DNA from: Caecitellus pseudoparvulus
Taxonomy: Eukaryota > Protista > Bigyra: Bicosoecida
Direction: 5' to 3'
Assembly: GCA_965644315.1 (NCBI GenBank)
Contig: CBFFRQ010000053.1
Location: forward strand, 372,001-436,000
DNA: 64,000 nucleotides
The notes beneath the pieces are model-generated. The model saw nothing but the letters and a program-made list of their open reading frames with translations, had not been told where the DNA came from and made no database searches. Positions 1 to 53,905 of the stretch are shown in pieces. Every line of letters starts with the position of its first letter. Positions within the stretch are counted from its first letter, which is position 1. The translations under genes were made by a program, and so were the position numbers.

Positions 1-2
1 TT

Positions 3-3000
3 GGCCTGTATTCCGTTGTCCAAGTCTTTGTTGCAGGGGTGGCCCAGGCTGTGAACACGGTGGGCGGCTTTGTTGCCATGGTGCCTCGCATTCGGCCTGC
101 CGATGTTGCGGATATCCGGTGGCAGATTAGATTGACCCACCTCGTTGAAAGTAACATGACTTTCTCGCCTAACGTCACGTTCACCTTCTACTCTGACCCT
201 ATTGATGCCAATGGAAGCTTTACGGGGTCTCGCGAGGTTGTGGTGGCTCCGGATCCTCCGCTGTACAGAGTCGCCAGCCGTGGACTGACGCTTGACCTGA
301 CAAGCGACAATTCCACCGAAAACGCCGACGAAGTTGTGCCTGGGGCTACGGTGGTCATGGCAGTAGGTTTGCAGTTCATTGAAGGCATAACAAATGATGC
401 CAAGGTGAGGGTTGACTTCGATTCTCCCGATCGCCTCTCGATGGTCTATGTGGACAGCATCACCGCCGCATCGGCCCTGTCATCTTCACTGGGAGACTTT
501 CACGATCTTCGCTTAACTCAAGTGCTGCATGATGCCGCAAACTCTTCTTGGATCGAAATCTCCCTTGGCCAAGTGAACAACTCAGACGCTGACAACTCCG
601 TACCGGAGTTCGTCAATGTCACGATCACCTTGTTCAGTCAAACGGTAGCCACGAATGTGCGCGGCGCGCTGAGTGTAGCAAATGCGTCAAAAGCATCCCG
701 CCTGGTCCCGCTTGGGCGACAACTCGCGTCCTCTGTGCTTGAAACTCTCGAACCCGACATCGCTGCTTCGATCTCCCCGCTTCTTGACACGGCTCCTGAT
801 GCAGGCGACACGTTCTCGATGACGGTTGTTGTTCAGGCCACCGCACCCCCTGGTGGGTACTCTGCCCCCTACAACTTGGTCGTGAGGGACTCCTTCTTGA
901 CACAAGGCAAGTACCGCATCGTCAGCGCACAGGTCACAGGAGGGTCTGGGGGTTCTACTTTTGTGGCAGCTGACTCACTGGGTGGGTTCGCTCCCTTGGC
1001 AACAGGCCCGGGTGGACTGACAGATTCTACGCAAGTCGCGACAGTGGACTCACTTCAGCCCGGCGCCTCACTGTCCTTAGCCTATGTGATCCAGTACAAC
1101 ACGTCAGTGGAAGCGGATGAGGACTTCCGGCCCCAAGTATGGGTTGAGTACGAATCCCACCCTCGCAGCCAGCACCACGTCGCACGAGCTTACCAGCTCA
1201 ACCAGGCGTCTATTGTCCAGCCAACGCTTAGCATATCCCCGAGTCAAGTCGCTGTGTCAACCTTCCCAGATCACGCAACAGACTCACTGACAGATGTGGT
1301 CATTGGCCAAGCTGTCGCTGTTCAAGTGGCTGTCAGGATCCCTGAAGGCACTGCTTCGAGCAGCAACGTCACTGTGAGGCTGGATCCACAAGATGTCTCT
1401 GTCTTCGTATCTGTTGACGCTGTGTTCCCTTCTTCTCCTAACCTTGTCGCGACTGAAGCGACTTGGGCCTCCATTGCCAGCTCCGCTGTCTCCGTTGAAG
1501 GCGAGTCCATGTTTTTTGACCTCGGTACCCTTGTGAATTTCGACACTGACAACGCTGTTGATGAGACGTTGAACTTTAATATGACTCTTCTTGTCCAGAA
1601 TGCCTCCCAGTTGGTCAGAGGAAGCACCGTATCAATTGAAGCAGCTTTCCTCAGCCAAGCTGAAGCAACCGCTCCATCAGACCAAGTCATCTTGCAAGTC
1701 AGAGAGCCCAGCCTATCCGATACGCACCCTGTCATTCCCTTGGTTGTCACAGACGTAGACAGCGGTGACTTGGTGAATGTCACGCTGTTCCTGTCCCATG
1801 CGACCGTGTCAGACTCGACCGCATTCAACGTCACACTGAGCGACACAGCGTTGACTTTGGGTCAGTACAGTGTTGTGAATGTTGCTTCTAACTCGTCAGC
1901 TGAGCTTGAGTGGCCACTTTCTCAAACTCCCGAACGAATTTGCATGCTCCCATTCATTTACGGTGATGAGACGGTCTCTTTGACTTTGACACTACTTTTC
2001 AACACATCGATCGATATCGCGGGGTCTGTTTCCACAGAATTTTCGGTTTCATGGACTTCGCATTTCAACCTTGGCGACGAACGGAAGTACGCCTTCGCAT
2101 CCCAGAACAACGCGGCTTTCCATCACTCAAGCCCCCAGATTGCCAGTTCCTATGTTAATGATGGAGCATCCCCTTCAACCTCCCAAGTGGTGGTGGGGTC
2201 CTTCTTGACATGGACTGTCCAAATCGCCCTCCCAGAAGGCACAGCGGACGATGCCACCTTCTCATTTAACATTGACGTACCAGACATCTTCAACAGTGAC
2301 TTGTCAATCGACGTTCAGGATGCATCCGTCTCTGGATCGGAAGTTGAGACTCGCTGTGGCGTGGGACTTGTCTCAAACTTGCCGCACGTTCCCGGAACAA
2401 GCGTCTCGGACACGGGAATCGAAATTCCTGCCTGCACCCTCGTGAACCTAAATCGTGACAACAATGTCAGCGAGCCGATCATTTTCACCATCGCTGGGAC
2501 GGTGCAGGACACACCATCTGTTGTTCAAGGCACGATCATCAATGTCACAACCAGGTTCGCCTCTCAATTCTACGACTCCGGTCCACGACCAGTTGTCGAA
2601 CTGTTAGTGGTGGAGCCCTTCTTGCAGGCTCCCGCCATCACCCCCGTCTCCGTCACCGACCGTGACGCTGGCGATGTGCTGCCCTTCCAGGTCACCCTGC
2701 AGCACACGCCTGGCAGTGACGCCACCGCCTTCTGGACACACCTCCTGGACAACGGCACCTTCACATACCTGGACGATGCAGGGGACCGTGTGGTGCTGCC
2801 GGGCGAGGCCATGTACACGCTGACCAGCGTGGCGGTGGACGGCACGCCGGGCAGTGTGGCGCGGTACACCGTGGACGGCACCGTCGTGTACCTGCCCGCC
2901 TTGACCCACGTGACCGGCACAGTGACAGTGGACATGGAGCTGACGCTGCTGCAGGCGGTGGAGGTCAGCACACAGGTGCAGCCATGGCTGCGTGTGGAGT

Positions 3001-6000
3001 GGGCGTCGCACAGTGCCGCTGAGCGGGCCCGGAACCGCACCGTGTACACAGCGCCTGCAGGCCAGCCTGTGGTGAGTGTGTCTGACCCCAGCATCACGCT
3101 GGTGGGCAGCACTGACGCATCTGTGGCATCTGACGTGGAGGCCAGCATCGGCACCTACATCACGTGGACCGTGGAGGTGGAAGTGCCAGAGGGCACCTAC
3201 CGCACTGCCGAGCTGGAGGTTGATGTCACCATGGTGTCGGGCGGTGTCGGCGACGCGCTGCTGCTGTCCACGCCTGCACTGCTGAGTGTGGCGGCCTTCC
3301 AGGAGACGACTGGTGGTGTGCGGACGCCGGCCTCCAGGAGCGACTGGTGGTGTGCGGACGCCGGGGTCGTCCGTGTCCAGCTCGTGTGCTGGTGTGGGCA
3401 CGTCCCTGGGCGCCTTGGTGGGCATGGAGGTGGTGCGGCCTGTGGGCCAGGGCTTTGTGCTGGACCTGTGCACGCTGGAGAATGCGCACCTGTCTGACAC
3501 CGACGCTGACGGGCTGAGTGAGGTGGTGGTGTTCCAGTTTGGCGGGCGTGTGCAGGATGTGGACGTGTCTGATGGTGTGGGTGGTGTCGCTCGTGGCGAC
3601 GTGTTTGAGAGCGTGGCACAGCTGACCAGTGCAGGTGTGCCGGCGGGTGCGACGGCTGTGACGTCGGCGTCGGTGCAGGTGGTGGAGCCGATGCTGTCGG
3701 CTGTGTCCATGACACCCTTGGCCACGGATGATGCTGATGCCAATGACGTGGTGACCTTCACTTTGGACATTGAGCATGTCCCAGTGTCCGACAGCACAGC
3801 CTACAACCTGGTGCTGTCTGACACGCTGCTGGTGTCTGGCGACTACGCCCTCGTGCATGTGGAGGTGGACGGCATCGTGACGTATGATGAGGCGGCACCC
3901 ACTGGCAGCCCCGCGGCGACCGGCGTGTTTGCCGAGATGCCTGCACTGAACGTGTCAACCAGCTCTGTGCAGGTGCAGTACGTTGTGCGGGTGAAGGCGG
4001 ATGTCGAGTTTGGAGTGACACTGCACCCTAACGTGACCCTGGCGTACAGCAGCCACCAAGTGCTGGCTGTGTCGCGAAACTACAGCAGCAGCCTTGGTGC
4101 GCCAGTGCACATTGGCGTGCGGGACACGGATACAGTAGCGTACAGCGTGGAGGTAGTGTCAGATGGAGACGCGCCAGCACCGCTGGGCAGTGTGGAGGTG
4201 GCGCCTGTGGGTAGCCTGGTGCAGGTCCTTGTGTCGTTAGAGCTGCCTGAGGGGCAGGCCAGTGCCTCAGAGCTGAATGTGACTTTGACGCGGCCCGACG
4301 TGGTGCAGTGGTTTGGGGGCAGTGCGGAAGCAGTGATCACCATCGCTGCATCGGCCGATGTGTCCAGCTCCTGTGCGGCGTCGTGGACCGATGTGGCAGC
4401 GGGCGCCACGCTGGGCCTCGACGGGGCGAGCTTTGTGCTGCCGCTGTGCACGCTGCAGAACGACAACGCTGATGATGGGCAGGTGGAGACGCTGAATGTG
4501 ACGGCTGTCCTGTACGTGGTGGACACACCCGCTGCTGTGCAGGGAGTGCAGCTGTTGGCGTACACCAACTTCTCCTCCGTGGCCAGCACCCCCACTGATG
4601 TGGCCAGTGATCTGCTGCAGGTGGTGGAGCCCTTCTTGCAGGCTCCCGCCATCACCCCCGTCTCCGTCACCGACCGTGACGCTGGCGATGTGCTGCCCTT
4701 CCAGGTCACCCTGCAGCACACGCCTGGCAGTGACGCCACCGCCTTCTGGACACACCTCCTGGACAACGGCACCTTCACATACCTGGACGATGCAGGGGAC
4801 CGTGTGGTGCTGCCGGGCGAGGCCATGTACACGCTGACCAGCGTGGCGGTGGACGGCACGCCGGGCAGTGTGGCGCGGTACACCGTGGACGGCACCGTCG
4901 TGTACCTGCCCGCCTTGACCCACGTGACCGGCACAGTGACAGTGGACATGGAGCTGACGCTGCTGCAGGCGGTGGAGGTCAGCACACAGGTGCAGCCATG
5001 GCTGCGTGTGGAGTGGGCGTCGCACAGTGCCGCTGAGCGGGCCCGGAACCGCACCGTGTACACAGCGCCTGCAGGCCAGCCTGTGGTGAGTGTGTCTGAC
5101 CCCAGCATCACGCTGGTGGGCAGCACTGACGCATCTGTGGCATCTGACGTGGAGGCCAGCATCGGCACCTACATCACGTGGACCGTGGAGGTGGAAGTGC
5201 CAGAGGGCACCTACCGCACTGCCGAGCTGGAGGTTGATGTCACCATGGTGTCGGGCGGTGTCGGCGACGCGCTGCTGCTGTCCACGCCTGCACTGCTGAG
5301 TGTGGCGGCCTTCCAGGAGACGACTGGTGGTGTGCGGACGCCGGGGTCGTCCGTGTCCAGCTCGTGTGCTGGTGTGGGCACGTCCCTGGGCGCCTTGGTG
5401 GGCATGGAGGTGGTGCGGCCTGTGGGCCAGGGCTTTGTGCTGGACCTGTGCACGCTGGAGAATGCGCACCTGTCTGACACCGACGCTGACGGGCTGAGTG
5501 AGGTGGTGGTGTTCCAGTTTGGCGGGCGTGTGCAGGATGTGGACGTGTCTGATGGTGTGGGTGGTGTCGCTCGTGGCGACGTGTTTGAGAGCGTGGCACA
5601 GCTGACCAGTGCAGGTGTGCCGGCGGGTGCGACGGCTGTGACGTCGGCGTCGGTGCAGGTGGTGGAGCCGATGCTGTCGGCTGTGTCCATGACACCCGTG
5701 TTACTGCGAAACATTGATGCTAACGACGTTCTCACGTTTCAGGTCATCGTTGCTCATGACGCTGTGTCAGATTCGACTGCTTTTCATCTGGCTATTTTCG
5801 ATGATGCCTTGACATCAAGACTGTACTCTGTCGAGTCTATCGTTGTTGACGGGGAGGTGACTTTCCAAGCTGCCCCCAATACCTCGTTCTATGGTGACGC
5901 CTCGGGTATGTTTGTCTCCATTCACAACCTCACAACCACTTCGGCGTTCAGTTTGATTGACTACCAGGTGCGAATCTCGTCCACCATCGAAGTTGGTTCC

Positions 6001-9000
6001 AGAATCGTGCCAAACTTGACGCTTACCTACTGGTCCCACCCCCTTGTCAGCTTTGGGAGGAACTACTCAGCTGAATTGGCAGCGCCGGTGGAAATCAACA
6101 TTCGGGATGCCTCGAACTTCACTGTTGATGTGTCTCTGACCTCAGATTCTTCCAGCCCCGCTGTTCCCGCGTTGAGTTCTGCGAAAACGCCCGTAGGGGC
6201 CCTTGTAGATGTGCACATGTCTGTTGAGTTCCCACAAGGTGTGATCTCGAATGCGGTCTTAGAAGTGTTCCTTAACTCGGCTGAGCAGGTCACGTGGTTT
6301 GACCCAGCGAGTGCCGGTCCACCGTCGTTTTTGACCGTCAACGCAACCACCTCGGCACTGACTTCTAGCTGCGGGGGTGTCCACAGCTTGGCAACGCTTG
6401 CCAGCTCTATCTCAAGCACGCGCTTGCTTGTTCCTTTGTGCAACATCACCCATGACCCCTTCACCAGTCCTGGGTTTGCTGCCCTGGAGCTGACTGCGCA
6501 GGTGCTTGTTCTGAACACGGCCGCCAACACAAAGGGGGCTCTGTGGGAAGCCACGCTTGAGTTTTCGTCGCAGTCCATCGAGGCCTTCAACGTCACATCG
6601 ACACCTGGAGTTATCGTCGAGCCAGCTCTGACAGCACCAGCTGTCGCTCCTCTCATGGTTGCGGGGCTAGATGCTGGTGACATAGTCAGCTTCAATGCGA
6701 CGTTTTCACACGAAGGACCCCTTCTCAGCGACGGCCATGCCTTCCATGTGCTGCTCGTGGACAACGGCAGCTTTTCCTTTTCGAGCGGGGGAGTTCCGTT
6801 GGTGTCCACCACACCCCTGTATGAGCTCGTGTCTGTTGAGGTTGATGGCGTCCCTGCAGGGGTTTCCAGCCACAGCGTAAACGGCGTCGTGTCAACACAA
6901 GCCTCCATGTTGCTCAGCGCCGGGGAGACCAAAGTAGCGTTTGCCATTCAACTGCTTCAAAGCATCGAGGCCGCGACCACTGTGACGCCATACTTCAGTA
7001 CTGAGTGGACAAGTCACCCTTCCTCGCGTGCAAGGAACTACAGCCGGTTTGCGAGCCCAACAGCCCAACCTATGCTCCTCATGCGTGACCTGGCTCTGTC
7101 GGCCAGTGTGCTCTCTGACAGCGCCACCGACGGGCAACTTAACGTGACCCTTGGCAGCCTCGTCACATGGCTTGTGGATATTGAGATTCCTGAAGGCACT
7201 GCCACCAACGCGACCTTTGTGTTGGATTTCTCCGACTCTGCATTCCTGGCGCATGTTGAAGCGCCCGCCTTTTCGTCCAGTCCCGGCCCATCTATCAACT
7301 CCTCTTGCGGAGCGTCCAGTGAAACACCACATGTGTTCTCGTTTGATCCGTCATTGACCTTGCAGTCTACCCGACTCACTGCGTCAAGCTCCCAAGTGCG
7401 CATTGACTCCTGTGCCCTGCGAAACTTTGACACATCCAATTCCCAAGCTGACTACCTCCAGCTTGTCGTTGCGGGAAGGGTCCACGAGGGCTCAGCCTCT
7501 GTGCAGCGTGGATCCACATTGAACTCATTGTTTTCGTCTGTGGGGCGGTTCAGTCCATTGCAGAATGCCAGCTTTGATGAGTTGGTTGTGCTCGAGCCAA
7601 CGCTTGCCCCGATTTCCGTGTCCCCTCCATCACGCGATCCTGTGGATGCGGGCGACTTGGTCACATTGTCACTCACATTGCATCATAACACCTCTTCGGA
7701 TGCGCATGCATACGATGTTCTTGTGCAAGACATGCACCTTGTGTGGGGCTCGTATGGCGCAGAGTTGGACGGCAGGCGATACGATACAGAGAGTGTCAGC
7801 ATCGACGGTGTCGTCGTCTTCAATGCTACAGCCGGCCATAACACGTATGGCCTTGACCCTCACGTAAATGGGACGTTTGCTGTGATCCCGAAGCTTCCGC
7901 TGGGCGGCTCAGTGACCATCGAGTACACCATTCGCGCAGGACCACTGCTTGAAGCTGCCTCCACCATAGGCACAGCCATCTCCACAAGTTGGCTCTCCCA
8001 TCCCGATATCGAATTTGCCAGGAACTACTCTGTTGAAGCTGCAGCGCAAGTAAACGTGTCAATCAGTGCTCCTACCCTGACCTTGGTTCGAACTAGTGAC
8101 AGCAGCACGTGGAATGACCAACACATTGCAGTTGGAGGTCTGTGGACCAACGACTTGGTGCTCGACATTCCGGAAGGGCGCTTATCCAGCGCAGTGCTTG
8201 AGCTCAACATCTCCTACGCCTCCAATGCTTCTGTTCCCACGAGGCCGCTGCTGTCAAACTTCTCTGTCCAGTCTGTCTCTGCCTCATCGACAGCAGTCAG
8301 TCCAAGCTACGCCTCCTGCATGGCAGGTGTCACCCATGTCCCTGGGCAGACAGAGTTTCTGCCTTTGCTGTCCACGTACACTGTCACTTCGTCTACTGAC
8401 GGCTGGACTACGGTGCGAATCCCACTGTGCACTCTCACCAACTCTGACCGAGACCCGCACACACGCGAGCATGTTGTAGTCAGGGTGCTTGCCCAAGTGA
8501 ATGGGTCTGAACCTGGGGCTGTGCGAGGAGCTACAATCTCCTCGCGGGGGCAACTGTCATCCGAGGTCGTGCAGTTCAGTGGGCCTAGCAATGTCTCTTC
8601 GTCGGCATTGACCACACAGATTGTGGAGCCGGCCTTGGTGTCGCCGTATGTTCAGCCCCAGCTCATTCACAGTCGCGATGCGGGGGACTTGCTGTCATTC
8701 ACCTTTGTCTTTGCCCATTCCATGCCTCCGAGTGACAGCGGGGCGTTTGAGCTTGCTGTGTTCGATTTGAACTTGCCCCGAGCCTTGGCCACTGAAACGT
8801 ACGAACCTGTGTCTCTGCTCATCAACGACACGGACGTGGCTGGCACAACATTCAACGGCACACGAGTTGGAGAGACTTCGGGTGTTGAGTTGGTCTTGGG
8901 CACTGCATGGACTGCATCGTACACAGTACGCCTTGGTGGAAGTGTGCGGCCTCTGCAAGTACTTCGACCCAATCTCACCTTCACCTTCAACAGCCACCTT

Positions 9001-12000
9001 GACGGGGAACGCAACTCTCTTTCGCGAGTCTACGCGTTGCAACCCTCCAGTGAGGCGCCTCAGATTTTTGTCAATGCCACACCGAGCATCGTTTCTGCTG
9101 ACCTTCATCCGCTCGACGGCGCGACAAGCAATGCTTCAGCTTTGACATATTCTGACGGGGAAGTTCCCCTGGCCGTTGGGCAACGTGCCCGCTTCGTGGT
9201 CGCGGTGCGCATCCCGGAAGGACTGACAGCCAGCGCAAGCGTGTCGATTTCGCTCTCTAGCCAGGACATGCTGCACCTTGACCTTGTCGAGGCATCATCT
9301 TCAGCCTCTGTTCCTGGAGGTGATGTGCAGGCTGACTGTGGCACCGGGTACGAGCCCCTTCATGGGCTTGGCAGCCGTGCACTGATTTCCGCGGACAAGG
9401 CAGAAGCTACACTGACCTTGTGCGACCTGTACAACTTGGATCGCAACAACTCGAGGAACAACTTCATCACGATTGAGTTCGGGGGTGTCGTGCCAGATAC
9501 CGCCTCAGCTGTGCCTGGCGCACAGTTCGGTGCTAACGTCACGTTCGCCTACTCTGCTGGTGGACGTGCTGCTACTCAAGCCCCCATGAACGAGACCGTT
9601 GCCTTCAGGATTGCGCGCATTGTGGAGCCTGTCTTAGCAGCTCCAGTGGTCAGTCCCGTAGAGCTTGGACCACACGATTCGGGAGACCTGCTTTGGTTCT
9701 CAGCTACTGTCAACCACTCCCTCAGTGCCTTCAACAACACTGCTTTCAACGTCACCCTCCTCGACGACCGGCTGCAGCATGGTCCTGGGGGTGCACTCGC
9801 TGCCACGGAGTACACCCTTGAGCAAGTGCTTGTGAATTCCGTCCCTGTGTACCTTGGGGGTGGGCAGCTTGCTTCAGGAATGCGAAGTGATCCTGGGCAA
9901 GGTATCTTGCTTCAAGTGGACCAGGTTCACCCAAGTGAGATTCTCCACGTCGATTGGCAAATTCGGCTCTCCCAGGAGGTCGAAGCCAACTCCACTGTGG
10001 CCATGCACCTTCATGGGGCGTACTTGAGCCACCCCGATGCGGGAGCCCGAGCGTTTGCCGTGCATGCTCAAGACATCCTCCCTGCACAGCCGGGAGTAGC
10101 GATTCACACTCCGTCTGCAAGCCTTGAAGTGCGATCAGATTCCTCTTCTCCTACGGAAGACAGCATCGTTGTTGGGCAGAGAGTGTTCTTCGACGTTGAG
10201 TTCTGGCTGCCTGAGGGAGTCACCAGTGATCTTGAGTTCACGCTGTCTTTGTTTCCAGCGGGCATGGTGACGATCATGGGCTTGTGGAGCAGACATGAGC
10301 AGCAACCTATGGACTTGTCCACCACCTCACCGTGTTCCGGTCAAAACTACAGCGCGATTGGACAGAACGTGTCTTCTGCTGTCTACAACGTAAACTTGTG
10401 CTCCCTCACAAACTCTGACACTGACAACGCAAAGCCAGAAACTGTGAAGATGACTGTGTACGGAATCGTGCAGAACTCTTCACTCGTGCAGCCCAACGCA
10501 ACTTTGCGAGCTGAAGCTGCCGCGCGTTCCAAGCTCACGGCCTTCGAAGCTACCGCGGCGATCAACAAGACAGTTGAGGTCTTCGTCGTCCAGCCGGTTG
10601 ACATCTCCATCTCTGAGTCTGTCTCCCCGTCTGCTGTTGCAACGATGGAAGAGTACACTGTGCAAGTTGACATGTTTGCAGACAACTCGACGGCAGTTCG
10701 AGGAGTCGTGGCTCTTGCAAGAGACGTAGAAGTGTTCCTCATGGTGCCGTCAGGGTTTATCCAGTACCTGCTGCGGAACACCACAGTTTCACGCAATGGT
10801 GTTCCAGCCCCCTTGCACTTGGATGGCCACGAGACACCTGCGGCCAGCTGGTATGGAACAGCTTCCAATGAGAGTGTGGTGGACCGGGCGTCTCTGGTGT
10901 CTGACCACGGGCTGGACTCCATCCTCCCGGTGCGGTATCCTCGAGTGGGTGACTTGGGCCTGCCCGCTTCGCGAAGGGAGCGCCTCCTCCACCACACACG
11001 GGCAAGCATGCCTGAGCACGCGCGATCCCTGTCAAGCGGATCAACCGAGAGTGTTGAGCCTCCCCCCACTTTCGACGTTGCAAGGGTCCGAGTTACGAAC
11101 ATGGCCCCTGGTGATGCAGTGAGCATCTCATTCACTGCCCTCGTTCCGGAGACCACGACTCCTGGCGCTGTCATCGTGCACTCCATGCTGGTGCAATGGT
11201 TCGCAACCCCAGTTGACCAGACGGCAGCAGGTGCGGTGCGACGCACTATCAGTAAGACTGTCAGCACTGTCGTCAATGTTGTGTGCGATGCAATCATTTC
11301 CTGTTCAGGAAACGGGCAGTGCCTCCCAAGCAACCAAACGGGGAAGGATGTGGGCTTCATTGGAGACCCACTTCTAAGCGGTGCAGGCACCATCTACAGC
11401 GGTGAGTCGCAGTGTGAGTGCAAGGCTGGCTGGACAGGCCCCAATTGCTGCACCTGCGATTCTTCAGTGCCTGCAAGCGAGCAGTGCAACGGAAACGGGC
11501 AGTGCCTCGTGGAAGGTGGCGGGCAGTGCACCTGCTCGGGAGCGGCTGGTGCGGAAGGCTTGGATCCTTTCTGCCAGGGACAGGCTTGCTCCACAAGCCC
11601 TGAGCTGTGTGCAAGCTCCAATTCGTCGTTTGCTGCCCTGCTGCCGCCCGGCCTGGGCGGGGTGTGCGCAGTTCAGTGTGAGGTGGGGGCTTGGAGTAAT
11701 TGGACCGTTTGCTCGGCTCCTTGTGATGGTGGCAACCAAACACGGTACAGGAATATTTCCGTGTACCCTGCTTATGGAGGAACGGAATGCCTCCCCCTCA
11801 ATGACTCCAGAGGGTGCAACGAGCGTGCGTGCGTCCTGACGGCGCAGGAAGCTCTGTGTGACATCAGCCAGGCAGACTTCTCAGTTGCTGCCGCCCTTCC
11901 GTTGGATACCTCACAAGAGCAGATTGCCGCATCCCTGACCGTGACCGTGCTGATCCTTGTTTTGTTCGCGCTCGTGGCGTTCTACTACCATCGAGCAGCA

Positions 12001-14757
12001 TTCCCGAGGTCCACTGCGCCGCTTGCCTGGGCTGCGCCGACACAGCAACTGTGGTGGAACTGGCGCAACCTCTTGGTGCTTTTCGCGTTTGCGGCGGACC
12101 TTCTCTTGATGTCTGCGCCCGCTTTCCTTGCTGAGACTCCGTGGTTTGCCTACCTGCCGGTGAAGGCGCTGGCGCGCTTCTTCGGCTTCACCATCTGGCG
12201 CAATATCCCTACATACTGGACCTTTTTTGGGCTCTTTGCTGTGCTCATGGTTGTGGCTTTGGTCGCATTGTACGCACATGACCAGCAGCGCTCCAATGCT
12301 CTGAAGGCAGTCTTGCTTCGAAAGCGGAGGCGCGCAGCAGCTTCCGCCGATGAAGATTCGGACGATCTTCCTCTGAGATCTGCTCCCGATGAGCCAGGAT
12401 TCAAGGAGGACCTTGAGGATTCTGAAGACGAGGGTGCTTCAAGGGGGCCCCCAGGGGGTGGTGAAGAGCAAGAAGCAAAACTTGCGTCACCGCGTAACAG
12501 GCCCGCAGCCGTAGGAAGGCGCAGGCAGCTTGCTCCTCTTGGCCGCCGCAAGCACTCTCCTCCCAGCTTGACCGACTCCCGCTCCTCAGACAAGCTGGAG
12601 GGGCGAGGCAGGCGTGATAGCACGACTTCGCACGCTTCTGACACAGCAACGAAAGCTTTACCAGCAATAAGGCCTGGGAAGAAGCTGGCCACGCGCAGCG
12701 CGCCCAGTGACGCCCGAGTTGTCCCAAGCAAGCCAAAGGTGCCGGCCGTGGAAACGAACGTGCTGAATGGGCGGGGTCTCTCGGTGCAGGAAGAGGAGTT
12801 GGTGAATCGTCGCATGGCACAGTACAACGCTCTGACCTTCCTCGTGCTCCTTTTGCTCCTCGTCCTGCTCGTGCCCATGTTGGACATTTTCCTGGAGGTG
12901 TGGACCTGCGCCTTCCCCTTTGGAGGGTTTTTCTATGGCGAGCAGGGGCAGTGTCTGGAGAGCACCTGCTGGGGAGCGGACCACCTGGCTGGCCTGTTCT
13001 TCTCGGCTTTGCTGCTTGCTTGGCTTGCCCCGATGGCCACCGTCATGTTGGTCAGCCGCATGCGGTATGACCAGGTGTCAGTGTGGCGTGAAGAACCAAT
13101 TGACTTGTACATCAGCAAGCGTGCTTTCCGTAAGTACTCTAAGCAGTATCAGCACAAACTGGAGCTGCAGCTCACCGCAGAGTACACGTTTGTCGCCGTG
13201 CTGACGAAGTTTGCGCTGGCTTGGTCTGGTGTCGTCGTTTCCCGATCCAGCACCATTGCTTCATCTGTGCTGAGCGTAATCATTTCCGTTGCGTCTGCAG
13301 TTTGGGTTTGGCGAAATCAGGACAACTTGATGAACATGCACCGCCTTCGCTTCGTGCCGGTGGTCGTGCATGCGTTCGCTGCCGTCGTCTGCTGCTTACT
13401 TGCCATCAATGAAGCAGCAACTCACGGGACAAATCCCACCGTTGAGGTGGAGGAGAGTGATGACGTGCTTCAAGAAGACCCTGACCTGAGTGGAACCACG
13501 TCAGGGGTCGTGAACATGGCAAGCGACGAGTTCTACGCTGCACACCCTGCAGTTGTGATCACATCTATTCTTTGGTTGCTGGTGCTACTTGGGGGCTGTA
13601 TCTGGGCCAAGCGCACAGATTCGCACGCCTTCCCGGGACTCCCACTGTTCCGTAAGCCCCGGAAAGGGGCTGCCCCTGCGCCTGCCGATGACTCGAGCGA
13701 CTCGGAGCTGGATGACACCACCCAGCGGGACGTGGATCGACAGGCCGATGCAACGATTTCAGCCGTGCTTAGTGCTGAGGACAGCGCGCTGCATGAAGTA
13801 TCTGCAGTGGCTCCTGTGCCTAGCACCGAGGGTGGATCAGATGACGACATGCCTGAGGCTCCCGACAGCCCTCTCAGCGGAATCCGCCCCTTCTCTCCTG
13901 ATGAGACTGCAGAGTCCATCGCGCTTCCTGGTGCTGTTGATGCAGAAACTGGCCTACCTCAGCTCAGGGCCATTAGCGGCCACTCACGACGTGGGCTAGT
14001 AGACATGATGGGGCAGGAATCGAGTGAGAGTGTAAAGGATCGCTTGTCACGCTTCAAGGCTCGTCATACCCGCTTCGATGTCGGGGGATTGGGCGGCTCC
14101 TCAGACGAGGAAGACTTCCAGCCGGTCGGTGATCGCGTGGCGGTGGAGGCGCTTGCCTTCGCCCCAGACGGCTCAGACAGCACAAGCGATGATGACTATG
14201 GGGTGGACACCGTACAGGAAGTGGACGTGGTCGGGGCAATGGTTGCAGCAGCTGCAACGGATGCGATGGCTCTAGGGCATGACGACGACGCAGACCTCTG
14301 GCGTGGAGAGTACGGGGACTCTGAGGACACCTCCTCAGATGAAGACGGCTCAGACTTAGGTAGCCACTCCTTCCACCCAAATCTTGGTGGTAGGTGGGCC
14401 CAGCGCCCTGGCGAGACAACAATGAGCCTTGACGATGCGCTGGCAGTGCCCCCAGGCGACTCGCGGGCGCCCAGGCTTCAACCACCAACCAGCACCACTG
14501 CGCATCTCTTTGCTGAAGAGTCCCTCTCTTCCTTGCCAGATTCAGCGTCAGACATCGGCTTCGTCCCCCCTGCTCAGTTCCAGCAGCCATCGACGGCCCC
14601 ACCAGGAGGAGACGGGGCTGACTTGGCCACACAACTCTTCTCCATGAACCACGGCGCTGACACTGACTCTTCTGATGCGTTGTCAACAGTTGATGAGGAT
14701 GACGAAGATGATGCATCCCGAGCGGCGGAGCGAGAGTTTGGTCGATGGATGCAGTGA
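3..14757 (+). CDS. Giant multi-pass cell-surface protein (5'-partial, >4,900 aa): tandem Ig-like two-domain repeats, EGF-like repeats, TSP1, about 9 TM helices, acidic C-terminal tail; one apparent frameshift at 3331-3364
   Basis: The frame of ORF 39..3497 is open back to the window edge. It joins ORF 3286..14757 if the 34-bp insertion at 3331-3364 (absent from the second repeat copy near 5340) is removed. Recurrent motifs 'VG..V...V.lPEG...LCTL.N.D.DN' and 'VVEP.L...DAGD.v.F...H...SD..AF...L.D...SH...R.Y'. Cys-rich CSGNGQC/CECKAGWTGPNC at about 11280-11610. TSP1 WSNWTVCSAPCDGG..TRYR at about 11677-11833. Hydrophobic helices at about 11935-13610. Confidence 0.85.
2607..3717 (+). repeat. Direct repeat copy 1 (1,111 bp including a 34-bp insertion) inside the giant CDS
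   Basis: Matches 4621-5697 from gtggtggagcccttcttgcag to gtgtccatgacaccc; the only difference I can see is the insertion at 3331-3364. Confidence 0.95.
4621..5697 (+). repeat. Direct repeat copy 2 (1,077 bp, in frame)
   Basis: Same sequence as 2607-3717 without the insertion; identical peptides appear in the ORF track. Confidence 0.95.
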
Positions 14758-15155: not shown

Positions 15156-16826
15156 TCAACCCCCTGAAAGCGCCTTGAAGAACGCTTGCAAGTGTCTCCG
15201 ATACTGGGTGATCTCAGCCTGGTCTGTCCATGCTGCGATGTCTTCTCTGTGTTGCAGTTGTGCGCACTTTTCGGCGTAAAGCAGGCAAGCGACGCCGCAG
15301 TCGAATCCTGTGTGCTGCTGACGGGCATGGATCGCGGAGACTGTGACGTTCTGCCAACCATCGGGGATGGGGTAGGCTGCATCAAGCCACAACAAGAGCT
15401 GCCTTGGCACGGAGCGCATTGAAAGGCCAGTGCGGCGCGTCCCTGGTTTTCCCATTGGCTCGAACACTTCAATACTCGGATATGGGTCAAATCGGATGCG
15501 AATCAAATTCCAGTGGTTGTTGCCGACGTTTGCAAAGCATACAATCGGTTTGCTCTGGTGCACCTGAGTGAGGGTGACGCACGTGTGTGAGCTTGGAACT
15601 GCCTTGGGCCGGGGTCGCAGAAGGGTCTCCAGTGCAAACATCCTATTCTCAGCCGATGCCGCACAGCTCTGCTGTGCCGGAGCACGCCCTGCCACAGACT
15701 CCAAGGCTGAACGGGTCCTGAAAGCTTCATGCTGCTCCCATGCAATTGACATGTCACGAAGGCTCGGCGGAAAGGAGACCCTCCAGGAGCTCGCTGAATC
15801 TCCTGTCATGGGAGTCAGGACAATGCGGGGCGTGAAGGCCCTGTGCTCAATGCTTCTGAGCGCTTCGGACGTGAGGGGTGGGGGCAAGGCATGCTGGACC
15901 CGTTCGAACGTTCCCACCAGCGCGGACAATGCACGGGCTGCTTTTCTGAAACGAGGCTGGTGCCACCAAGCGAGCTGCTGCCTCTCGGTGGGTGCCTCTT
16001 CATTTGAAAGTGGCCAGGCGTCAAAAGCACGCATTCGCCTTGTCATCGTCAAGCACAGGTGCCAGCCTGAGTTGACGCTGGCCTCCTCACTTTCCGCGGA
16101 AGACCAAGTTGCGTGCACACAACTGAGGCGAGATGCTACTGAAAATGGGGCATGGTCCCGCTGCAGCTCATGGCACGGTGCCACTGCCAACGCAGCTGAT
16201 GCCAGTGCTGAGCGGGCGGAGTCGGAAGAAAAGCGCTTGCTGGATGGGACAGAATCGGCGTGAACTTGCTTTGACACTTCCAGGGGAGGAGGGGGGCTAG
16301 GAAAACGAACAGTGCGGCCTTGCAAATCGATAGGACGAAATGCTGCTAACGAACCGTGCTGCCGCGCTGCATGTGGGAGGCTGTAGGCAAGGAACTCGCA
16401 TGGAAGAAAGTGCACCCTGTCGTACACGCTTGCAAACTGCATAGACACAAAGTCAATCAAGGGACTTGAGAGCCAGGAGTCTCCGTTGACTGGCTCACTT
16501 GCAAGGTCCATGCTACATGCCATGCTCACGATGTCAGAGAGCCCTGGCACGTCTGCCGTGGACCTCGGCAGCGTATGGGTCAGGGGTGTAGCGGCGCAGT
16601 CAAGCCGGCAAAGCATGCTTTGGAAAGGCGGGGGGTCTCTCCACTTGTAAGGAAGCATGGATCTGGGTACCTTGACCCGCACTTTTAGCCCGGGCGTAGG
16701 GAGGTCCTCGTGCAAGTCTGCACCTGCGCCTGCGCCAGAACCAGCGAACGTAGCCGCACCAGGCCCAATTGCTCCGTCAGACGGTTCAGAAGCGCCACAG
16801 CGAGGCCGCTTCCTCTGCGATGGCAT
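15156..16826 (-). CDS. Ulp1/SENP-like (peptidase C48, clan CE) ubiquitin-like-protein protease with a large internal insertion
   Basis: WLSSPLIDF (like WLNDEVINF), NVGNNHWNLI (catalytic His), EVFEPM (acidic residue), QQHTGFDCGV (oxyanion Gln and catalytic Cys); N-terminal basic QRKRPR motif (possible NLS). Confidence 0.75.
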   Translation of the reverse strand: MPSQRKRPRCGASEPSDGAIGPGAATFAGSGAGAGADLHEDLPTPGLKVRVKVPRSMLPYKWRDPPPFQSMLCRLDCAATPLTHTLPRSTADVPGLSDIVSMACSMDLASEPVNGDSWLSSPLIDFVSMQFASVYDRVHFLPCEFLAYSLPHAARQHGSLAAFRPIDLQGRTVRFPSPPPPLEVSKQVHADSVPSSKRFSSDSARSALASAALAVAPCHELQRDHAPFSVASRLSCVHATWSSAESEEASVNSGWHLCLTMTRRMRAFDAWPLSNEEAPTERQQLAWWHQPRFRKAARALSALVGTFERVQHALPPPLTSEALRSIEHRAFTPRIVLTPMTGDSASSWRVSFPPSLRDMSIAWEQHEAFRTRSALESVAGRAPAQQSCAASAENRMFALETLLRPRPKAVPSSHTCVTLTQVHQSKPIVCFANVGNNHWNLIRIRFDPYPSIEVFEPMGKPGTRRTGLSMRSVPRQLLLWLDAAYPIPDGWQNVTVSAIHARQQHTGFDCGVACLLYAEKCAQLQHREDIAAWTDQAEITQYRRHLQAFFKALSGG

Positions 16827-17307: not shown

Positions 17308-18739
17308 ATGATACTCGCAGTTTCATTTGCTCTCCTCAAAACTTTTCGCCCTAATGTGCCACGCGCAGGGTCTGGCTTTTCCTGGGACACCGTCAAAGGT
17401 GACGAGCACCGTGAGAACTACCTCGGCCATTCATTGCGTGCGCCTGTCGGGCGCTGGCAACATGGCAGGTCTGTATATTTAAGCATGGCGCATTGTACTT
17501 GCCGAAGCATGTCCGCTCCCTCCCCGTCGCAGGGATCTGATGTGGTACACCAAAGCTGCTCCGAGCACATCCTCCGGCAGAGCATCACAATTCGTGTCCG
17601 CTAAGCAGCACGACGACGAGCTGATGAGGCGGGCCCTGTGAGTGTCTGCCAGACGAGAAACACAAGCAGCAGATCATGGTTCTCTTTTTTCTCGCAGTGG
17701 GCTTGAGCCAAGGCCTAGGGAAGACCTACAACCAAGCACTGGGCACACCCTGACACCGGCGGAACGAGCCAAGCTATTTGGTAGGTCGGAGCACAGCGAC
17801 CATACCCTCAAAGGAGAACGCACATCTGGCCTAGGAAGTGAGGGGGTTGCGTTTAGCGCTGCAGATGCGTCAAAAGCTCTCAGCTCCGCCGAGGACTTGG
17901 CGAGGGCACGGGGCAGAGTGTATGGCTCAAAGCCAGGGAGAGCGGCGGCTGCAAGGGCGCCATCTGCTGAGAGGCCTGTCTCTCCTGAAGCTGCTCAACT
18001 CAGTTCTGGGGGTGCCACTATCTCTCACGAAGCATCCGCGGGCGCAGCACAGCACAGCCCATCAGCGAAAGATTCTTCTCGCATAGGCATCCACAGACAC
18101 CAGCCTACGAGCGACCAGCCCCACCGATCCCGGGACAGGTATGGCGATGACCGGCCCCACCGATCCCGGGACAGGTATGGCGATGACCGGCCCCACCGAT
18201 CCCGGGACAGGTATGGCGATGACCGGCCCCACCGATCCCGGGACAGGTATGGCGATGACCGGCCCCACCGATCCCGGGACAGGTATGACCATGACCGGCC
18301 CCACCGATCCCGGGACAGGCATGGCGATGACCGGCCCCACCGATCCCAGGACAGGCATGGCGATGACCGGCCCCACCGATCCCAGGACAGGTATGGCGAT
18401 GACCGGCCCCACCGATCCCGGGACAGGTATGGCGATGACCGGCCCCACCGATCCCAGGACAGGTATGGCGATGACCGGCCCCACCGATCCCGGGACAGGC
18501 ATGGCGATGACCGGCCCCACCGATCCCGGGACAGGTATGGCGATGACCGGCCCCACCGATCCCAGGACAGGTATGGCGATGACCGGCCCCACCGATCCCG
18601 GGACAGGTATGGCGATGACCGGCCCCACCGATCCCGGGACAGGCATGGCGATGACCGGCCCCACCGATCCCAGGACAGGTATGGCGATGACCGGCCCCAC
18701 CGATCCCGGGACAGATATGGCCAGAATTCCTTACTATGA
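17308..18739 (+). CDS. MMTAG2: MMTAG2/C1orf35 homologue (multiple myeloma tumour-associated protein 2 family), 3 exons, with an RD/RS-rich repetitive C-terminus; start codon uncertain
   Basis: Spliced product reads [31 protein letters not shown]|DLMWYTK...LMRRAL|GLEP, matching the family motif F.WedVK.DK.RENYLG.SL.APVGRWQ.GRDL.WY.K. GT-AG introns at 17469-17532 and 17638-17697 keep the frame. Confidence 0.88.
18113..18724 (+). repeat. Coding minisatellite, 17 x 36 bp (gaccggccccaccgatcccgggacaggtatggcgat), encoding DRPHRS[R/Q]DR[Y/H]GD
   Basis: Head-to-tail units counted directly; no spacers between them. Confidence 0.97.
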
Positions 18740-32440: not shown

Positions 32441-33698
32441 CTACTCTGCATCCACGATGCCATGCTCGGAGATGGCGAAGGTTGCATCAGCTTCAGGGCA
32501 GTTGGGGCTGTCGTATACCTTGCTGTGGTGGGGGAAAGGAAGGCGTGGGGTGAGGTTGCCTCCACTCGCTCAGCGCAGCCTTACCAGATGCGCTGCTCCC
32601 CTTTGCCTTTCCGAAAGTACAGGCGGGTGGTGGACGCGTGAGCGATGATGTGGCCGCCAACAGGCTTCTTTGGGTCCGCTCCGACGAATACCGAGCCCCC
32701 TGGATCTGCAGTAACCTGGTTTACGATGAGGATGGCGACGTTGAACTCTTCTGCGATCTTCTTCAGGGCTGCGAGGTGCTTGTTGAGTTTCTGTTGCCGC
32801 TCAGCCAGCTCACCCCGCCCACTGTAGTCCACCCTGAACAAAGCCATGACGCTGTCCAGGATGACTAAGCGAGTGGGCTCCTCATCATCTGCGATGAGGG
32901 CGGCGATATGCTCCACGATGGCCATCTGTGCCTCGTGGGTGTGCACACGTGCGTAGGCGATGTTGTCCAGAACCGCAGTTGGGTCAAGTCCAAAGCGCTT
33001 CTCTGCGATCTGAGCCACCCGCTCGACCCTGAAGCTGCCCTCGGTGTCCACGACAATGACCTTTCCTGCCCCCCCGCCCATGTCACGGCCAAGTTGGCAC
33101 GTCACTGCAAGGGTGTGTCCGAGCTGCGTCTTGCCCGTGCGGAACTCGCCAAACACCTCTGTGATTGCCTGAGTCTCAATCCCCCCCCCAATGATAGTGT
33201 CCAGTTCTTTGGAGCCTGTGGTGATCCGGATGACACTCTGCCGAGCAGCGAGCGTGTCGTTTCCGCTCTTGAAGCGCGCGGCGCTGCCTTGGAGCTTCCT
33301 GGCTGCCTCGCACACCTTCTCCACTTTGGCCTCTGAGAAGCCCTTGATCTCCAACAAAGACTTGGAGGGAGTCATAAGTACCTGCCCAACAGTGTGCAGC
33401 CCTGCATCTTTGCACTTCTTGATGTCAGCCGCGTTGATCCCAAAGTCCTGCGCATGCATGAAACGCTGCGTGGTGCGCAGGTTGTGCGTCTGTGCCACCC
33501 CATGTTGGCCGTACCTGGAGGCGCTCAATCGGGTCAAATTCAGCCAATTCTTCGTCGTGCTTTGGTTCTTGTGCGGAATCCGCCGCCTCGGTCGCCTTAT
33601 CGGCCGCCTGCACGCTGTGCGTGCCATGTGAGCAGTGTGGCAACGCAGGATGCAGCTTGCGTCACCGTGGCAGGGACTCACCTAGCAGCCGCCGCCAT
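32441..33698 (-). CDS. DMC1: Meiotic recombinase DMC1 (4 exons)
   Basis: Walker [44 protein letters not shown] and [18 protein letters not shown] match DMC1 rather than RAD51 (ELSARQMHL..FLR). The last exon encodes [26 protein letters not shown]. Confidence 0.92.
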
Positions 33699-51433: not shown

Positions 51434-53905
51434 TCACGGGTGCTGGGCCGCCACAGGGTTGGAGACCCACGCCGGGCCCCCGCCAGCAGCAGTGGCCCCG
51501 GCCTGGCCAGAGGCTGCTGCTGCCGCGCCCGCTGCGCCGCCCAGCATGCCCTTCATGTACAGCACACCCACGACGACGAGAGCGACTCCCGCCACTGCTC
51601 CCAGGACGCCCCCCACGATGGCGCCAGTGTTGTCAGGGGCTGCGTCAGGCTGGCCGTTTGAGGTGGCGGCGTTTCCAGCCTGGTCGACGCCGGGCTGTGC
51701 GGTGGAGGCGGCGGGGGTGGTGGTGGCGGATGGTGCGGCAGGCGACGATGTGGGGGATGGCGTGTTGGCGGCAGTGGTGGAGGGTGAGGGGGAGGGTGTG
51801 GTGGTGGAGCTTGGTGAGGTGGAGGGTGTGGTGGAGGGTGTGGGTGTGCCGGTGGGCGAGGGCGATGCAGTTGGCCTGTGAGAGTCGGGGGAGGGGAGGG
51901 TGTGGTGGAGGGCGGTGGGCGGGGTCATGTGCATGATGCAACGCACGTGGGGGACACTGATGGCGTGGGGGGTGCGGTGTTGGTGGGTGAGGGTGTGGAT
52001 GTGGTCGTGGGTGTGGGGGAGGTGCTTGGCGAAGAGCTAGGGGTGACGGATGGAGTGCTTGAGGAGGAGGGCGTCACTGTGCTGGAGGCGGAAGCAGTGG
52101 GGGTGTATGAGGGCGTCACAGATGGTGTGGGGGAGACAGAGGGGGTGGAGGAGGGAGAAGGACTGCGAAGCGCGAGGGGTAGTGTGAGGCTGTGGGAGTG
52201 CTGGCGCACAGCAAACTATTGCGTACGACTCACAAGGCACCTCGACCTCCGAAGACGATGTACGCCGCCCCGAGGTAGGGGGATGTGGAAGTGTCCCAAG
52301 CAGACGCAATGAGCACATCTGGCACTCCATCGCCATCCACGTCGCCACCCCCATCAATGGAAGTACCGAGCCTCAAGCTTCTGTAGTCTCCTCGATACGT
52401 GGTGCCAACATTCCCTGTCGCTGCAGCCGATGAAGTAGATGATGGTACCATGTTTCCTCTGAAGATGTACGCAGCTCCGGCCCGTTCCATGCCTGGAAAA
52501 TCGCGCATGAAACTGCTGAGGACGAAGTCGTCGTAGACGTCACCATCCAGGCTCCCGGCCGGGCTCATTGTGTAGCCCAATTGCTCCTCTTCGCTGGATC
52601 CCAAGATTTGAGAGCAGCTTCCAGTGGCTACGTCAATGGGGGACTGGTCCAGCAGCCCCGTGGAGGCAGAGTTGTTGCGTGCCCGGCCGCAGATCAAGTA
52701 CACCCGACCGGCCTGTAGATCGTATTGTCCATCGATGGGGCCAGAGTCTAACGCCTGCCAGGGTGCTCCGATGAGGAAGTCTGCGAAGCCGTCATTGTTC
52801 CTGTCTCCAGCCGGAGCAACAGCCACGCCCAACCATGAACCAAGAACATTCGTCGAAAAGCGCACGCCTTGGTCGTTTGCAAGGATGTCCTGGATGTCGA
52901 ACGTCCCATTCAGGGGTGCTGAGGGCCCGCCAAAGATCAAGTATGCTCTACCGTACTCATTGAAGGAGGAGTGCGTGCTCGGCGCTCCGATGACAAAGTC
53001 ATGGTATCCATCATTGTCCACGTCACCCACGCCGGCTATCGACCCAGCCAAATTCTCGTTGCGGTCGTTGCCGTTGATTGTGAATGATACCGACGTGGTC
53101 GCATTGCGAGGGCGACCGAGGAAGCCCAGTAGCTGACCTTTCGAGTGTTGGTGTCGACTTTGTGCGCCGACAGCAAAGTCAGCGTAGCCGTCGTTGTTGA
53201 TGTCACCGAGAGAGCTGAGCGAGTCACCAAAAGAACCCCCTGCATCGTCCACAATCGCTCGCCCCTCACTGAGCGGCAGGGATGACACGGACATGTTTGC
53301 CGGCCATGTTTCGCGCCCGTAAATCAGGAACGATCGACCGACGGGGTCGCCGTCGACCCTGAAGGCTGTGGCAGACACCAGGACATCATCAATGCCGTCA
53401 CCGTCCACGTCCCCTGCTGCGGATACTGTGGATCCGAACATGTCATACTCGTTCACGCCATAGAGCGTCACTGACTGCCCGATCGTGCCTGCGAGCATAG
53501 ATACGGTTGGGCTGGTCCAGTTCCCAGACGGGCGCCCGAAGGTGATGACGGCCATGCCACACCCTCTCAGTCCAGCAATGGTGGTATGGGGATGTCCTGT
53601 GATGATGTCATCGTAGCCATCGTTGTTCACATCCCCAGCTATGGCGACCCGCCAGCTCTGAGTGCCGGGCCCAGTCACACGGAGCTGCACTGCCAGCGAT
53701 GGGTCAGCCGCCATGGCCCGCAAGTCGATGGGGGACGATGACAGATGCCTCGATGCCCTGAGGTGGTGATGGTTGCGAAGGTGAGTGCCGCAGTGTGAGT
53801 GGAGGCACCGCGGCTCGGAACGTACCGTTGGGCTGCACTTGCGTGCTGCGCCGTGGTGGCGAGTGTGAGCAGGGCAGCAAGTGGCAGGCCTGCCCACACT
53901 CTCAT
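51434..53905 (-). CDS. Type-I membrane protein: signal peptide, FG-GAP (integrin-alpha/GPI-PLD-type) beta-propeller, Ser/Thr/Pro stalk, TM helix, short tail
   Basis: Signal MRVWAGLPLAALLTLATTAQHASA; seven GDvnxDGyxD repeats with GAP/GRAY motifs; TPSPS-rich exons; TM IVGGVLGAVAGVALVVVGVLY. The pieces join through GT-AG introns. Confidence 0.85.

What the first reader, a model, noticed from the sequence alone, without database searches (positions are those of the whole stretch)
3..14757. Giant receptor-like protein: bacterial-adhesin-type tandem repeats fused to EGF/TSP1 and a ~9-TM membrane module
Seen in sequence: more than 4,900 codons with no evident intron, in a genome where many small genes have introns. 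About 11 alternating A/B modules of about 320-350 aa: A = 'VG..V...V.lPEG...LCTL.N.D.DN..E', B = 'VVEP.L...DAGD...H...SD..AF..L.D...SH..R.Y'. Many N-x-S/T sequons. Then EGF-like Cys repeats, a spondin-type TSP1 domain, about 9 hydrophobic helices with a large basic loop (about 12280-12810), and a roughly 380-aa Asp/Ser-rich tail. Established knowledge: 'G..VTY...lPEG' and 'GD.VT....D' modules are typical of bacterial DUF11/isopeptide-forming fimbrial repeat proteins, whereas TSP1 and EGF are eukaryotic adhesion domains. Inference: a chimeric long-stalk adhesion or mechanosensory receptor (prey capture or substrate attachment), analogous to adhesion GPCRs or polycystin-1. I do not recognise this architecture as a named family.
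Basis: partly seen in the sequence, partly recalled or inferred. Interest (0 to 1): 0.8.

Follow-up and report, generated by a model that had tools for sequence, protein, structure and literature searches.

The report
Bacterial adhesin grafted onto protist receptor
A marine single-celled eukaryote carries a gene of more than 9,000 codons in which an almost whole bacterial surface adhesin is joined to a eukaryotic nine-helix membrane base; the bacterial internal cross-link residues are gone and cysteine pairs have appeared in many repeats, a conversion I found no description of.

Summary
Real gene, larger than reported. The window holds only its 3' half. It starts about 12.6 kb upstream with a signal peptide and two introns and encodes about 9,050 aa, or about 9,700 with a collapsed 660-aa repeat unit. 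The window is not one ORF: a 34-bp duplication shifts the frame, but four sequencing runs from four studies all lack it, so it is an assembly error.

The 770-aa head and about 20 two-domain stalk units are homologous and collinear with giant bacterial CLIPPER(DUF11)/TIGR04226 adhesins. All 34 eukaryotic units lack the isopeptide Lys and Asn; 20 carry a perfectly co-varying cysteine pair instead. EGF-like repeats, TSP1 and a nine-helix domain follow. That domain has no Pfam or PDB match and only 27 relatives among 1.84 billion proteins; the 16 looked up had no functional name. It is not PF06011, an adhesion GPCR or a polycystin.

Eight loci in this genome and five contigs from other organisms share the design, with interchangeable heads. 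Best reading: a long-stalk adhesion or contact receptor; signalling is inferred. The scan noted paralogues on other contigs of this genome before (s1-661146, s1-661276).

The parts
1..14757 (+). 3' half of the gene (last exon). The rest lies upstream of the window on G000:C53: exon 1 with ATG and signal-peptide-like leader 359359-359512; intron 70 nt; exon 2 359583-359651; intron 145 nt; exon 3 from 359797; 770-aa bacterial-type head about 359874-362171; stalk from about 362680; five near-identical 975-bp units 366362-371377. The window starts at C53:372001.
   Evidence: the leader was judged by eye
1..10596 (+). Window part of the stalk: 11 A and 10 full B domains (whole gene about 20 B+A units, about 41 CnaA-like Ig domains). 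B = CLIPPER/DUF11-like, A = TIGR04226-like. Isopeptide Lys/Asn lost; Cys pair in many A domains
2607..5697 (+). Near-exact tandem repeat of a 1,980-bp (660-aa) unit; the assembly shows about 1.5 copies, depth indicates about 2.5-3.5
3307..3340 (+). 34-bp duplicated stretch that causes the apparent frameshift; assembly error
   Evidence: 'skips 34' in 4 of 4 runs from 4 studies; the second copy of the repeat lacks it
10570..11283 (+). Last Ig-like domain, interrupted by a loop with an RRxL(Q)-type motif (10972-10989): candidate processing site
   Evidence: motif in the paralogues and relatives that have this domain; only a weak B-profile match to the second half; cleavage is inference
11284..11665 (+). 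EGF-like cysteine-rich repeats
   Evidence: EGF_2 E 0.009, EGF_Teneurin E 0.013, both below cut-off; Cys pattern conserved in paralogues
11677..11832 (+). Spondin-type TSP1 domain
   Evidence: PF19028 E 1.3e-13, 51 bits, cut-off 41
11857..11859 (+). Lone Cys 22-27 residues before TM1, present in 15 of 15 family members; candidate disulfide tether to the three-Cys TM4-TM5 loop
   Evidence: the pairing is inference
11914..13614 (+). Nine-helix membrane domain with a 173-aa disordered loop (12289-12810, predicted cytoplasmic)
   Evidence: pTM 0.78; no Pfam or PDB match
13615..14757 (+). 381-aa acidic, Ser-rich tail (predicted cytoplasmic) and stop codon

Best explanation
One gene for a surface protein of 9,000-9,700 aa in a marine heterotrophic stramenopile. 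It arose when a bacterial CLIPPER/TIGR04226 fibrillar adhesin (head plus stalk) was fused to a eukaryotic EGF-TSP1-nine-helix base. The protein enters the secretory pathway and is N-glycosylated. The isopeptide cross-links are gone and, in about 60% of A domains, a disulfide has appeared. About 41 Ig domains hold the head roughly 150-200 nm off the membrane, where it binds a surface or a bacterium. The base anchors it and probably reports binding or pull through the nine-helix domain and its cytoplasmic loop and tail. Shown: gene, homology, residue changes, family. Inferred: disulfide formation, rod length, adhesion, processing at the RRL loop, signalling.
For: One frame across the break in 4 of 4 runs. 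28 of 40 strain differences fall at third codon positions (p 2e-6). Two introns lie inside the bacterial-type head and the neighbours are eukaryotic. Bacterial-only profiles match nearly every module, and 58 of 120 motif-selected bacterial loci carry the same tandem unit while reversed controls score nothing. Fold neighbours are pilin and antigen I/II Ig domains. Triad loss is 34/34 and Cys co-variation is 20 both / 14 neither. The design recurs at 8 loci here and on 5 foreign contigs. SadA and the CRMPs, both 9-TM plus EGF proteins, act in adhesion, phagocytosis or invasion (PMC2173991, PMC9815656).
Against: There are no localisation, binding or knock-down data. The tree has no root, so the direction of transfer rests on distribution (many bacterial phyla against a few protists). 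The head's ligand is unknown even in bacteria. RNA contigs cover the gene, but DNA carry-over is not excluded and no intron was tested with RNA. The nine-helix domain has no characterised relative.
Confidence: 0.6

Rival explanations
1. Force-gated channel or receptor: the nine-helix base is a very diverged relative of the fungal TRP/Pkd2-like (PF06011) superfamily, and the stalk is a lever that gates ion entry.
For: The ESM Atlas feature search lists a PF06011-containing cluster at 0.91. The genome holds 26 other PF06011-matching places, nearly all in giant ORFs; three of them, by their coordinates, share the Sib-like head with this family's paralogues. Fission-yeast Pkd2 passes calcium on stretch (PMC9727806). 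There are conserved polar residues in the helices and a conserved tether Cys.
Against: The PF06011 HMM does not hit this family even at E 10 within one genome, and the family profiles do not hit those loci. The Atlas recognition score (1929) is below its reliability line. There is no structural match to any solved channel.
Confidence: 0.2
2. Structural coat or shed tether: the ectodomain is cleaved at the RRL loop and works as a glycocalyx, an attachment thread or an anti-virus/anti-predator coat; the base only traffics and anchors it.
For: About 137 sequons; recent, homogenised repeat expansion and strain-variable depth; a paralogue ORF of 15,791 aa; a conserved RRL motif.
Against: A nine-helix base with invariant residues and long cytoplasmic parts is more than an anchor needs. 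The base also occurs with almost no ectodomain (P0007/P0035), which suggests a function of its own.
Confidence: 0.15
3. Artefact: a bacterial contig or several genes joined by mis-assembly, or a frameshifted pseudogene.
For: The assembly does contain a frameshift and a collapsed repeat here. A published survey regarded eukaryotic isopeptide-domain hits as likely contamination (10.1101/2025.04.25.650565).
Against: Stalk, EGF, TSP1 and the base lie in one 3,823-aa ORF. The same junction recurs in paralogues and in other organisms, some with many introns. Reads remove the frameshift, and differences are mostly at third positions.
Confidence: 0.03

Closest known systems
Bacterial CLIPPER (DUF11, PF01345) / TIGR04226 fibrillar adhesins of Planctomycetota, Chloroflexota, Desulfobacterota, Gammaproteobacteria and others
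   Same: Collinear head of about 770 aa right after the signal peptide; same B+A tandem unit of 310-330 aa; CnaA-like Ig fold; shared motifs.
   Different: Eukaryotic host with introns; no Lys-Asn isopeptide (0 of 34 units, against an intact A triad in 67 of 82 bacterial units); Cys pair instead; ends in EGF/TSP1/nine helices rather than SdrD-B, choice-of-anchor or sortase-linked ends.
Dictyostelium SadA and apicomplexan CRMPs
   Same: Nine predicted membrane helices with EGF-like repeats outside; surface adhesion, phagocytosis or invasion roles (PMC2173991, PMC9815656).
   Different: No CLIPPER stalk is described for them; sequence kinship could not be tested (no sequences were reachable) and the two hit sets I looked up held no named member.
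Fungal TRP/Pkd2-like family (PF06011) and its giant protist relatives
   Same: About nine helices with N outside and C inside (helix count recalled from memory); language-model feature likeness 0.91; neighbours in the same genome share heads.
   Different: No HMM match in either direction.
Dictyostelium Sib adhesion proteins
   Same: Several paralogues and a relative carry a head with a weak SIBA-E_N match (E 0.08); bacterial-like repeats in a protist adhesion protein (recalled from memory).
   Different: This gene has the bacterial adhesin head instead; no VWA domain was found; Sib is single-pass (from memory).
Adhesion GPCRs and polycystin-1
   Same: Long modular stalk, possible membrane-proximal cleavage, multipass base (analogy only).
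   Different: Nine helices; no GAIN/GPS, REJ, PLAT or PKD domain; no 7TM or TRP fold match.

Membership tests
CLIPPER/DUF11 and TIGR04226 isopeptide domains | CnaA-like Ig beta-sandwich fold | tested here: met
   AF2 pLDDT 88, two sandwiches; RrgB D2 Z 11.9, rmsd 2.8 over 139 residues; CLIPPER 9ifr Z 9.8, rmsd 2.4 over 120. These Z values are close to many other Ig folds.
CLIPPER/DUF11 and TIGR04226 isopeptide domains | Sequence homology to bacterial members over the whole unit | tested here: met
   Up to 106 bits per unit and 404 per ORF, reversed control none; the four ORFs scanned pass PF01345 and TIGR04226 cut-offs; bacterial-only profiles hit the query.
CLIPPER/DUF11 and TIGR04226 isopeptide domains | Score above the curated family cut-off | tested here: not met
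   TIGR04226 18 bits against 30; TIGR01451 13 against 24; no PF01345 hit.
CLIPPER/DUF11 and TIGR04226 isopeptide domains | Lys-Asp-Asn isopeptide triad | tested here: not met
   Lys and Asn 0 of 34 in both domains; the A-domain Asp 0 of 34; only the B-domain Asp is kept, 33 of 34.
CLIPPER/DUF11 fibrillar adhesins | Tandem stalk behind a signal peptide in a long surface protein | tested here: met
   signal peptide judged by eye
PF06011 fungal TRP/Pkd2-like | Match to the family HMM | tested here: not met
PF06011 fungal TRP/Pkd2-like | Same membrane fold | tested here: inconclusive
   Feature score 0.91 with low recognition; the Atlas shape search was uninformative with the 130-residue disordered loop left in; no solved structure matched.
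PF06011 fungal TRP/Pkd2-like | Stretch-activated cation permeability | not testable with these tools
   needs reconstitution
Adhesion GPCR | 7TM fold with GAIN/GPS domain | tested here: not met
   nine helices; no GPS/GAIN; GPCR rows only at E 2.8 or worse
Polycystin-1 | PKD, REJ, GPS, PLAT domains and a TRP-like channel domain | tested here: not met
CRMP / SadA | Nine helices preceded or accompanied by EGF-like repeats | tested here: met
   against PMC9815656 and PMC2173991
CRMP / SadA | Sequence homology of the membrane core | not testable with these tools
   no reference sequences reachable; no named protein among the 16 hits that were looked up
Sib (Dictyostelium) | SIBA-E N-terminal domain, VWA domain, single membrane helix | tested here: not met
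   no such Pfam hit in this gene; the head search hits paralogues but not C53

The most novel reading that the evidence does not exclude
A horizontally acquired bacterial 'shock-absorber' adhesin has been rebuilt as the force-transmitting arm of a eukaryotic sensory receptor. Isopeptides were exchanged for disulfides and glycans, heads became swappable, a cleavage site sits inside the last Ig domain so the two halves can be pulled apart, and a disulfide ties the stalk to an uncatalogued nine-helix fold that signals or conducts ions when prey or a surface is caught.
Probability: 0.25. Interest if true: 0.85.

Novelty: new variant of a known kind. Interest (0 to 1): 0.72.

Why it matters
How bacterivorous marine flagellates attach to surfaces and recognise prey is largely unknown at the molecular level, and this family gives concrete candidates. 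The one global survey of isopeptide-bond domains judged its eukaryotic hits to be likely false positives or contamination (10.1101/2025.04.25.650565). Here a CLIPPER-type adhesin is fully integrated in a eukaryote (introns, paralogues, several species), and it was kept while losing the chemistry that defines the family. That is a natural experiment on isopeptide versus disulfide stabilisation that can be tested on single domains. The nine-helix base is a confidently modelled membrane domain with no solved relative.

Tried and rejected
Word-index searches found nothing for the membrane domain except a fragment of itself and nothing for the repeat alignment; both are limited by length window and shared words, and the later motif scan showed the repeat blank was a sensitivity failure. 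tblastn of the repeats against plasmids and phages: no match. Viral contigs: none. PDB by sequence: only chance hits (the TPC1 hit covers one helix at E 0.02 and was rejected). Exons and the two frames were searched apart; the joined step was left out and the length is arithmetic. Rejected: real frameshift or pseudogene; bacterial contamination; an intron at the break (no need, DNA runs lack the 34 bp too); membership in PF06011, adhesion GPCRs or polycystins. The host could not be named: the best named DMC1 hit is Blastocystis at 63%, which only weakly points to an opalozoan stramenopile.
Full report
Observation. The stretch 3..14757 is not one open frame. One frame runs to 3497 and another from 3286 to 14757. 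The break lies in a short imperfect duplication inside the first copy of a 1.1-kb exact internal repeat (2607-3717 = 4621-5697). Contigs from four runs of four studies, one of them a metatranscriptome, all skip 34 bases at 3306 to 3341, and none keeps them. That restores the frame, so the break is an assembly error. The same call shows 2-3.5 times the depth over 2607-4620 and joints that go back 2,014 bases, so at least one 660-aa unit is missing from the assembly. The modules, sequons, EGF-like repeats, TSP1 domain, nine helices and acidic tail are present as described. The large loop is mixed-charge, not strongly basic.

The whole gene. The window is C53:372001-436000 of a 30.6-Mb eukaryotic assembly. 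The first frame extends 12.2 kb upstream (5,250 aa stop to stop). Before it lie a signal-peptide-like exon (ATG at C53:359359) and a 69-nt exon, separated by GT-AG introns of 70 and 145 nt whose phases fit. Of 40 listed differences between strains, 28 are at third codon positions (p 2e-6), as expected of a gene under selection. Neighbours are eukaryotic (kinesin, DMC1). The DNA is found in marine metagenomes and metatranscriptomes; expression is likely but not proven, since contigs cannot exclude DNA. The host is probably a bigyran stramenopile flagellate, on weak evidence.

The stalk is bacterial in kind. One unit folds with confidence into two Ig-like sandwiches (pLDDT 88). Its nearest solved neighbours are antigen I/II, PrgB, pilin D2 domains and the CLIPPER domain, with integrin legs close behind, so the fold alone does not decide origin. 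Family libraries give only sub-threshold hints, and the language-model search points to DUF11. The deciding test was a motif scan of bacterial genomes scored with a profile of the eukaryotic unit: 58 of 120 loci, from Planctomycetota, Chloroflexota, Desulfobacterota, Pseudomonadota, Bacteroidota, Myxococcota and others, hold the same B+A unit, mostly in tandem, at up to 106 bits per unit, with no hit in reversed controls. Four of these proteins were scanned and are clear DUF11/TIGR04226 members. Profiles built from bacterial units alone recover nearly every module of the query. Homology also covers the head: 770 aa match the bacterial N-terminal region collinearly (109 bits), 1,400 aa align at 22% with one planctomycete protein, and exon 2 resembles the first mature motif of the bacterial proteins. 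So an entire adhesin front end was taken over, and two introns now interrupt it. In a tree with the trait columns left out, all 34 eukaryotic units from three organisms form one side of a branch with SH-aLRT 100. This fits one origin. The tree has no root and names no donor; bacteria-to-eukaryote is inferred from distribution. The bacterial sample was selected by a motif and is not exhaustive.

The chemistry was changed. In bacterial units the A-domain Lys, Asp and Asn occur in 75, 79 and 70 of 82, and the B-domain Lys, Asp and Asn in 46, 77 and 71. In eukaryotic units both Lys, both Asn and the A-domain Asp occur in 0 of 34; only the B-domain Asp remains. Two cysteines appear in the eukaryotic A domain, together in 20 units and absent together in 14, never singly. 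A disulfide is the simplest reading; I could not measure the distance in the model, and the units are related, so the count overstates independence. The survey that named CLIPPER reports it from bacteria and archaea, notes that some members lack the bond, and treats eukaryotic hits as likely false positives or contamination (10.1101/2025.04.25.650565).

The base is eukaryotic and uncatalogued. A profile of six paralogous membrane domains finds 27 proteins among 1.84 billion; the 16 looked up come from metagenome or sequencing-run assemblies and carry no functional name. The model has nine helices (pTM 0.78) and no match in the PDB by Foldseek or VIA. The Atlas shape search was uninformative. 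The feature search returns unnamed oomycete and chlorophyte clusters and one PF06011 cluster, but PF06011 hits 26 other places in this genome and not this family. A distant link stays open. Conserved features are a lone Cys before TM1 (15 of 15), three Cys in the TM4-TM5 loop and a Lys in TM6, and an RRL-type motif in a loop of the last Ig domain.

Family. Eight loci in this genome carry the base (C44/C54 and C184/C197 may be allelic pairs), and the stalk also occurs on C94 (15,791-aa frame), C55 and C164. Stalk plus base recurs on five contigs of other organisms, some with many introns. The base also occurs with almost no ectodomain. Heads differ: this gene and C94 have the bacterial head, while C44, C54, C89, C95 and C164 have a Sib-like head that is also found on C29, C32 and C65, where weak PF06011 matches lie at fitting coordinates. 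Head, stalk and base therefore behave as exchangeable parts.

How it most likely works. The signal peptide leads the chain into the secretory path, where it is glycosylated and disulfide-bonded. About 41 Ig domains at 4-5 nm each (general knowledge) place the head 150-200 nm from the membrane. The head binds a surface or a bacterium, as in the bacterial family. EGF and TSP1 modules link the rod to a nine-helix base, with the large loop and tail inside. Cleavage at the RRL loop and a disulfide tether would let load on the stalk act on the base; both are inference. The nearest functional analogues are SadA (adhesion and phagocytosis; PMC2173991) and the CRMPs (invasion; PMC9815656), each with nine helices and EGF repeats; kinship with them could not be tested. 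I put adhesion or contact reception at 0.6, a Pkd2-like force-gated channel at 0.2, a shed coat or tether at 0.15 and artefact at 0.03.

Verdict. The protein works like a fibrillar adhesin on a multipass receptor base. It is homologous to, but not a member of, the isopeptide-forming CLIPPER/TIGR04226 families, and it is not an adhesion GPCR, polycystin or PF06011 member by the tests run. My paper searches found no description of this architecture. The scan had noted paralogues elsewhere in this genome; the collinear bacterial head, the isopeptide loss with the cysteine pair, and the read evidence on the frameshift were tested here. New variant of a known kind; interest 0.72.

Noticed in passing
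G000:C94:256567-309442: A paralogue with a 15,791-aa open frame, the same bacterial head and about eight near-identical 4,794-bp super-repeats; it runs off the contig end, so its base is unknown.
   Followed up: partly
G000, 26 places (C141, C69, C87, C40, C18, C80, C32 and others): A second, larger family of giant ORFs (about 800-6,600 aa) with PF06011-like membrane domains; seven pass the Pfam cut-off.
   Followed up: no
G000:C29:75996-88421, C32:809982-822614, C65:4242-16874: A Sib-like head and a weak PF06011 match lie in what appear to be the same 4,500-4,700-aa frames, which links the two receptor families by head exchange.
   Followed up: partly
L037:5039-6967 (P0035, P0007): The nine-helix base with only a leader, an RRL motif and the tether Cys: a minimal member suited to structure work.
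   Followed up: partly
G000:C164:1-26868: About 25 near-identical 978-bp units broken by many frameshifts; probably assembly errors as in this gene.
   Followed up: no
L011 and P0003 C-terminal tails: The cytoplasmic tail holds a repeated, Trp-rich domain of about 130 aa that the other paralogues lack.
   Followed up: no
window 18105-18739: A 36-bp coding minisatellite giving an Arg/Asp-rich repeat tail.
   Followed up: no
window 15156-16826 (-): 556-aa ORF with no Pfam hit; its C-terminal His...Gln/Cys pattern looks like a Ulp1-type cysteine protease.
   Followed up: no
window 32581-33681 (-): Meiotic recombinase DMC1, a hint of sex in this flagellate; used here only to place the host.
   Followed up: partly
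window 52230-54509 (-): FG-GAP repeat protein (integrin-alpha-like propeller; PF01839 E 9e-32).
   Followed up: no
G000:C53:366360-371380 and window 3364-5697: GC3 is 0.85 and 0.77 in the recently duplicated blocks, against about 0.6 elsewhere in the gene; possibly GC-biased conversion among repeats.
   Followed up: partly
L047, L084, L051, L085 and related loci: The conserved 800-aa head of these bacterial adhesins showed no Pfam or NCBIfam model of its own in the proteins scanned.
   Followed up: partly
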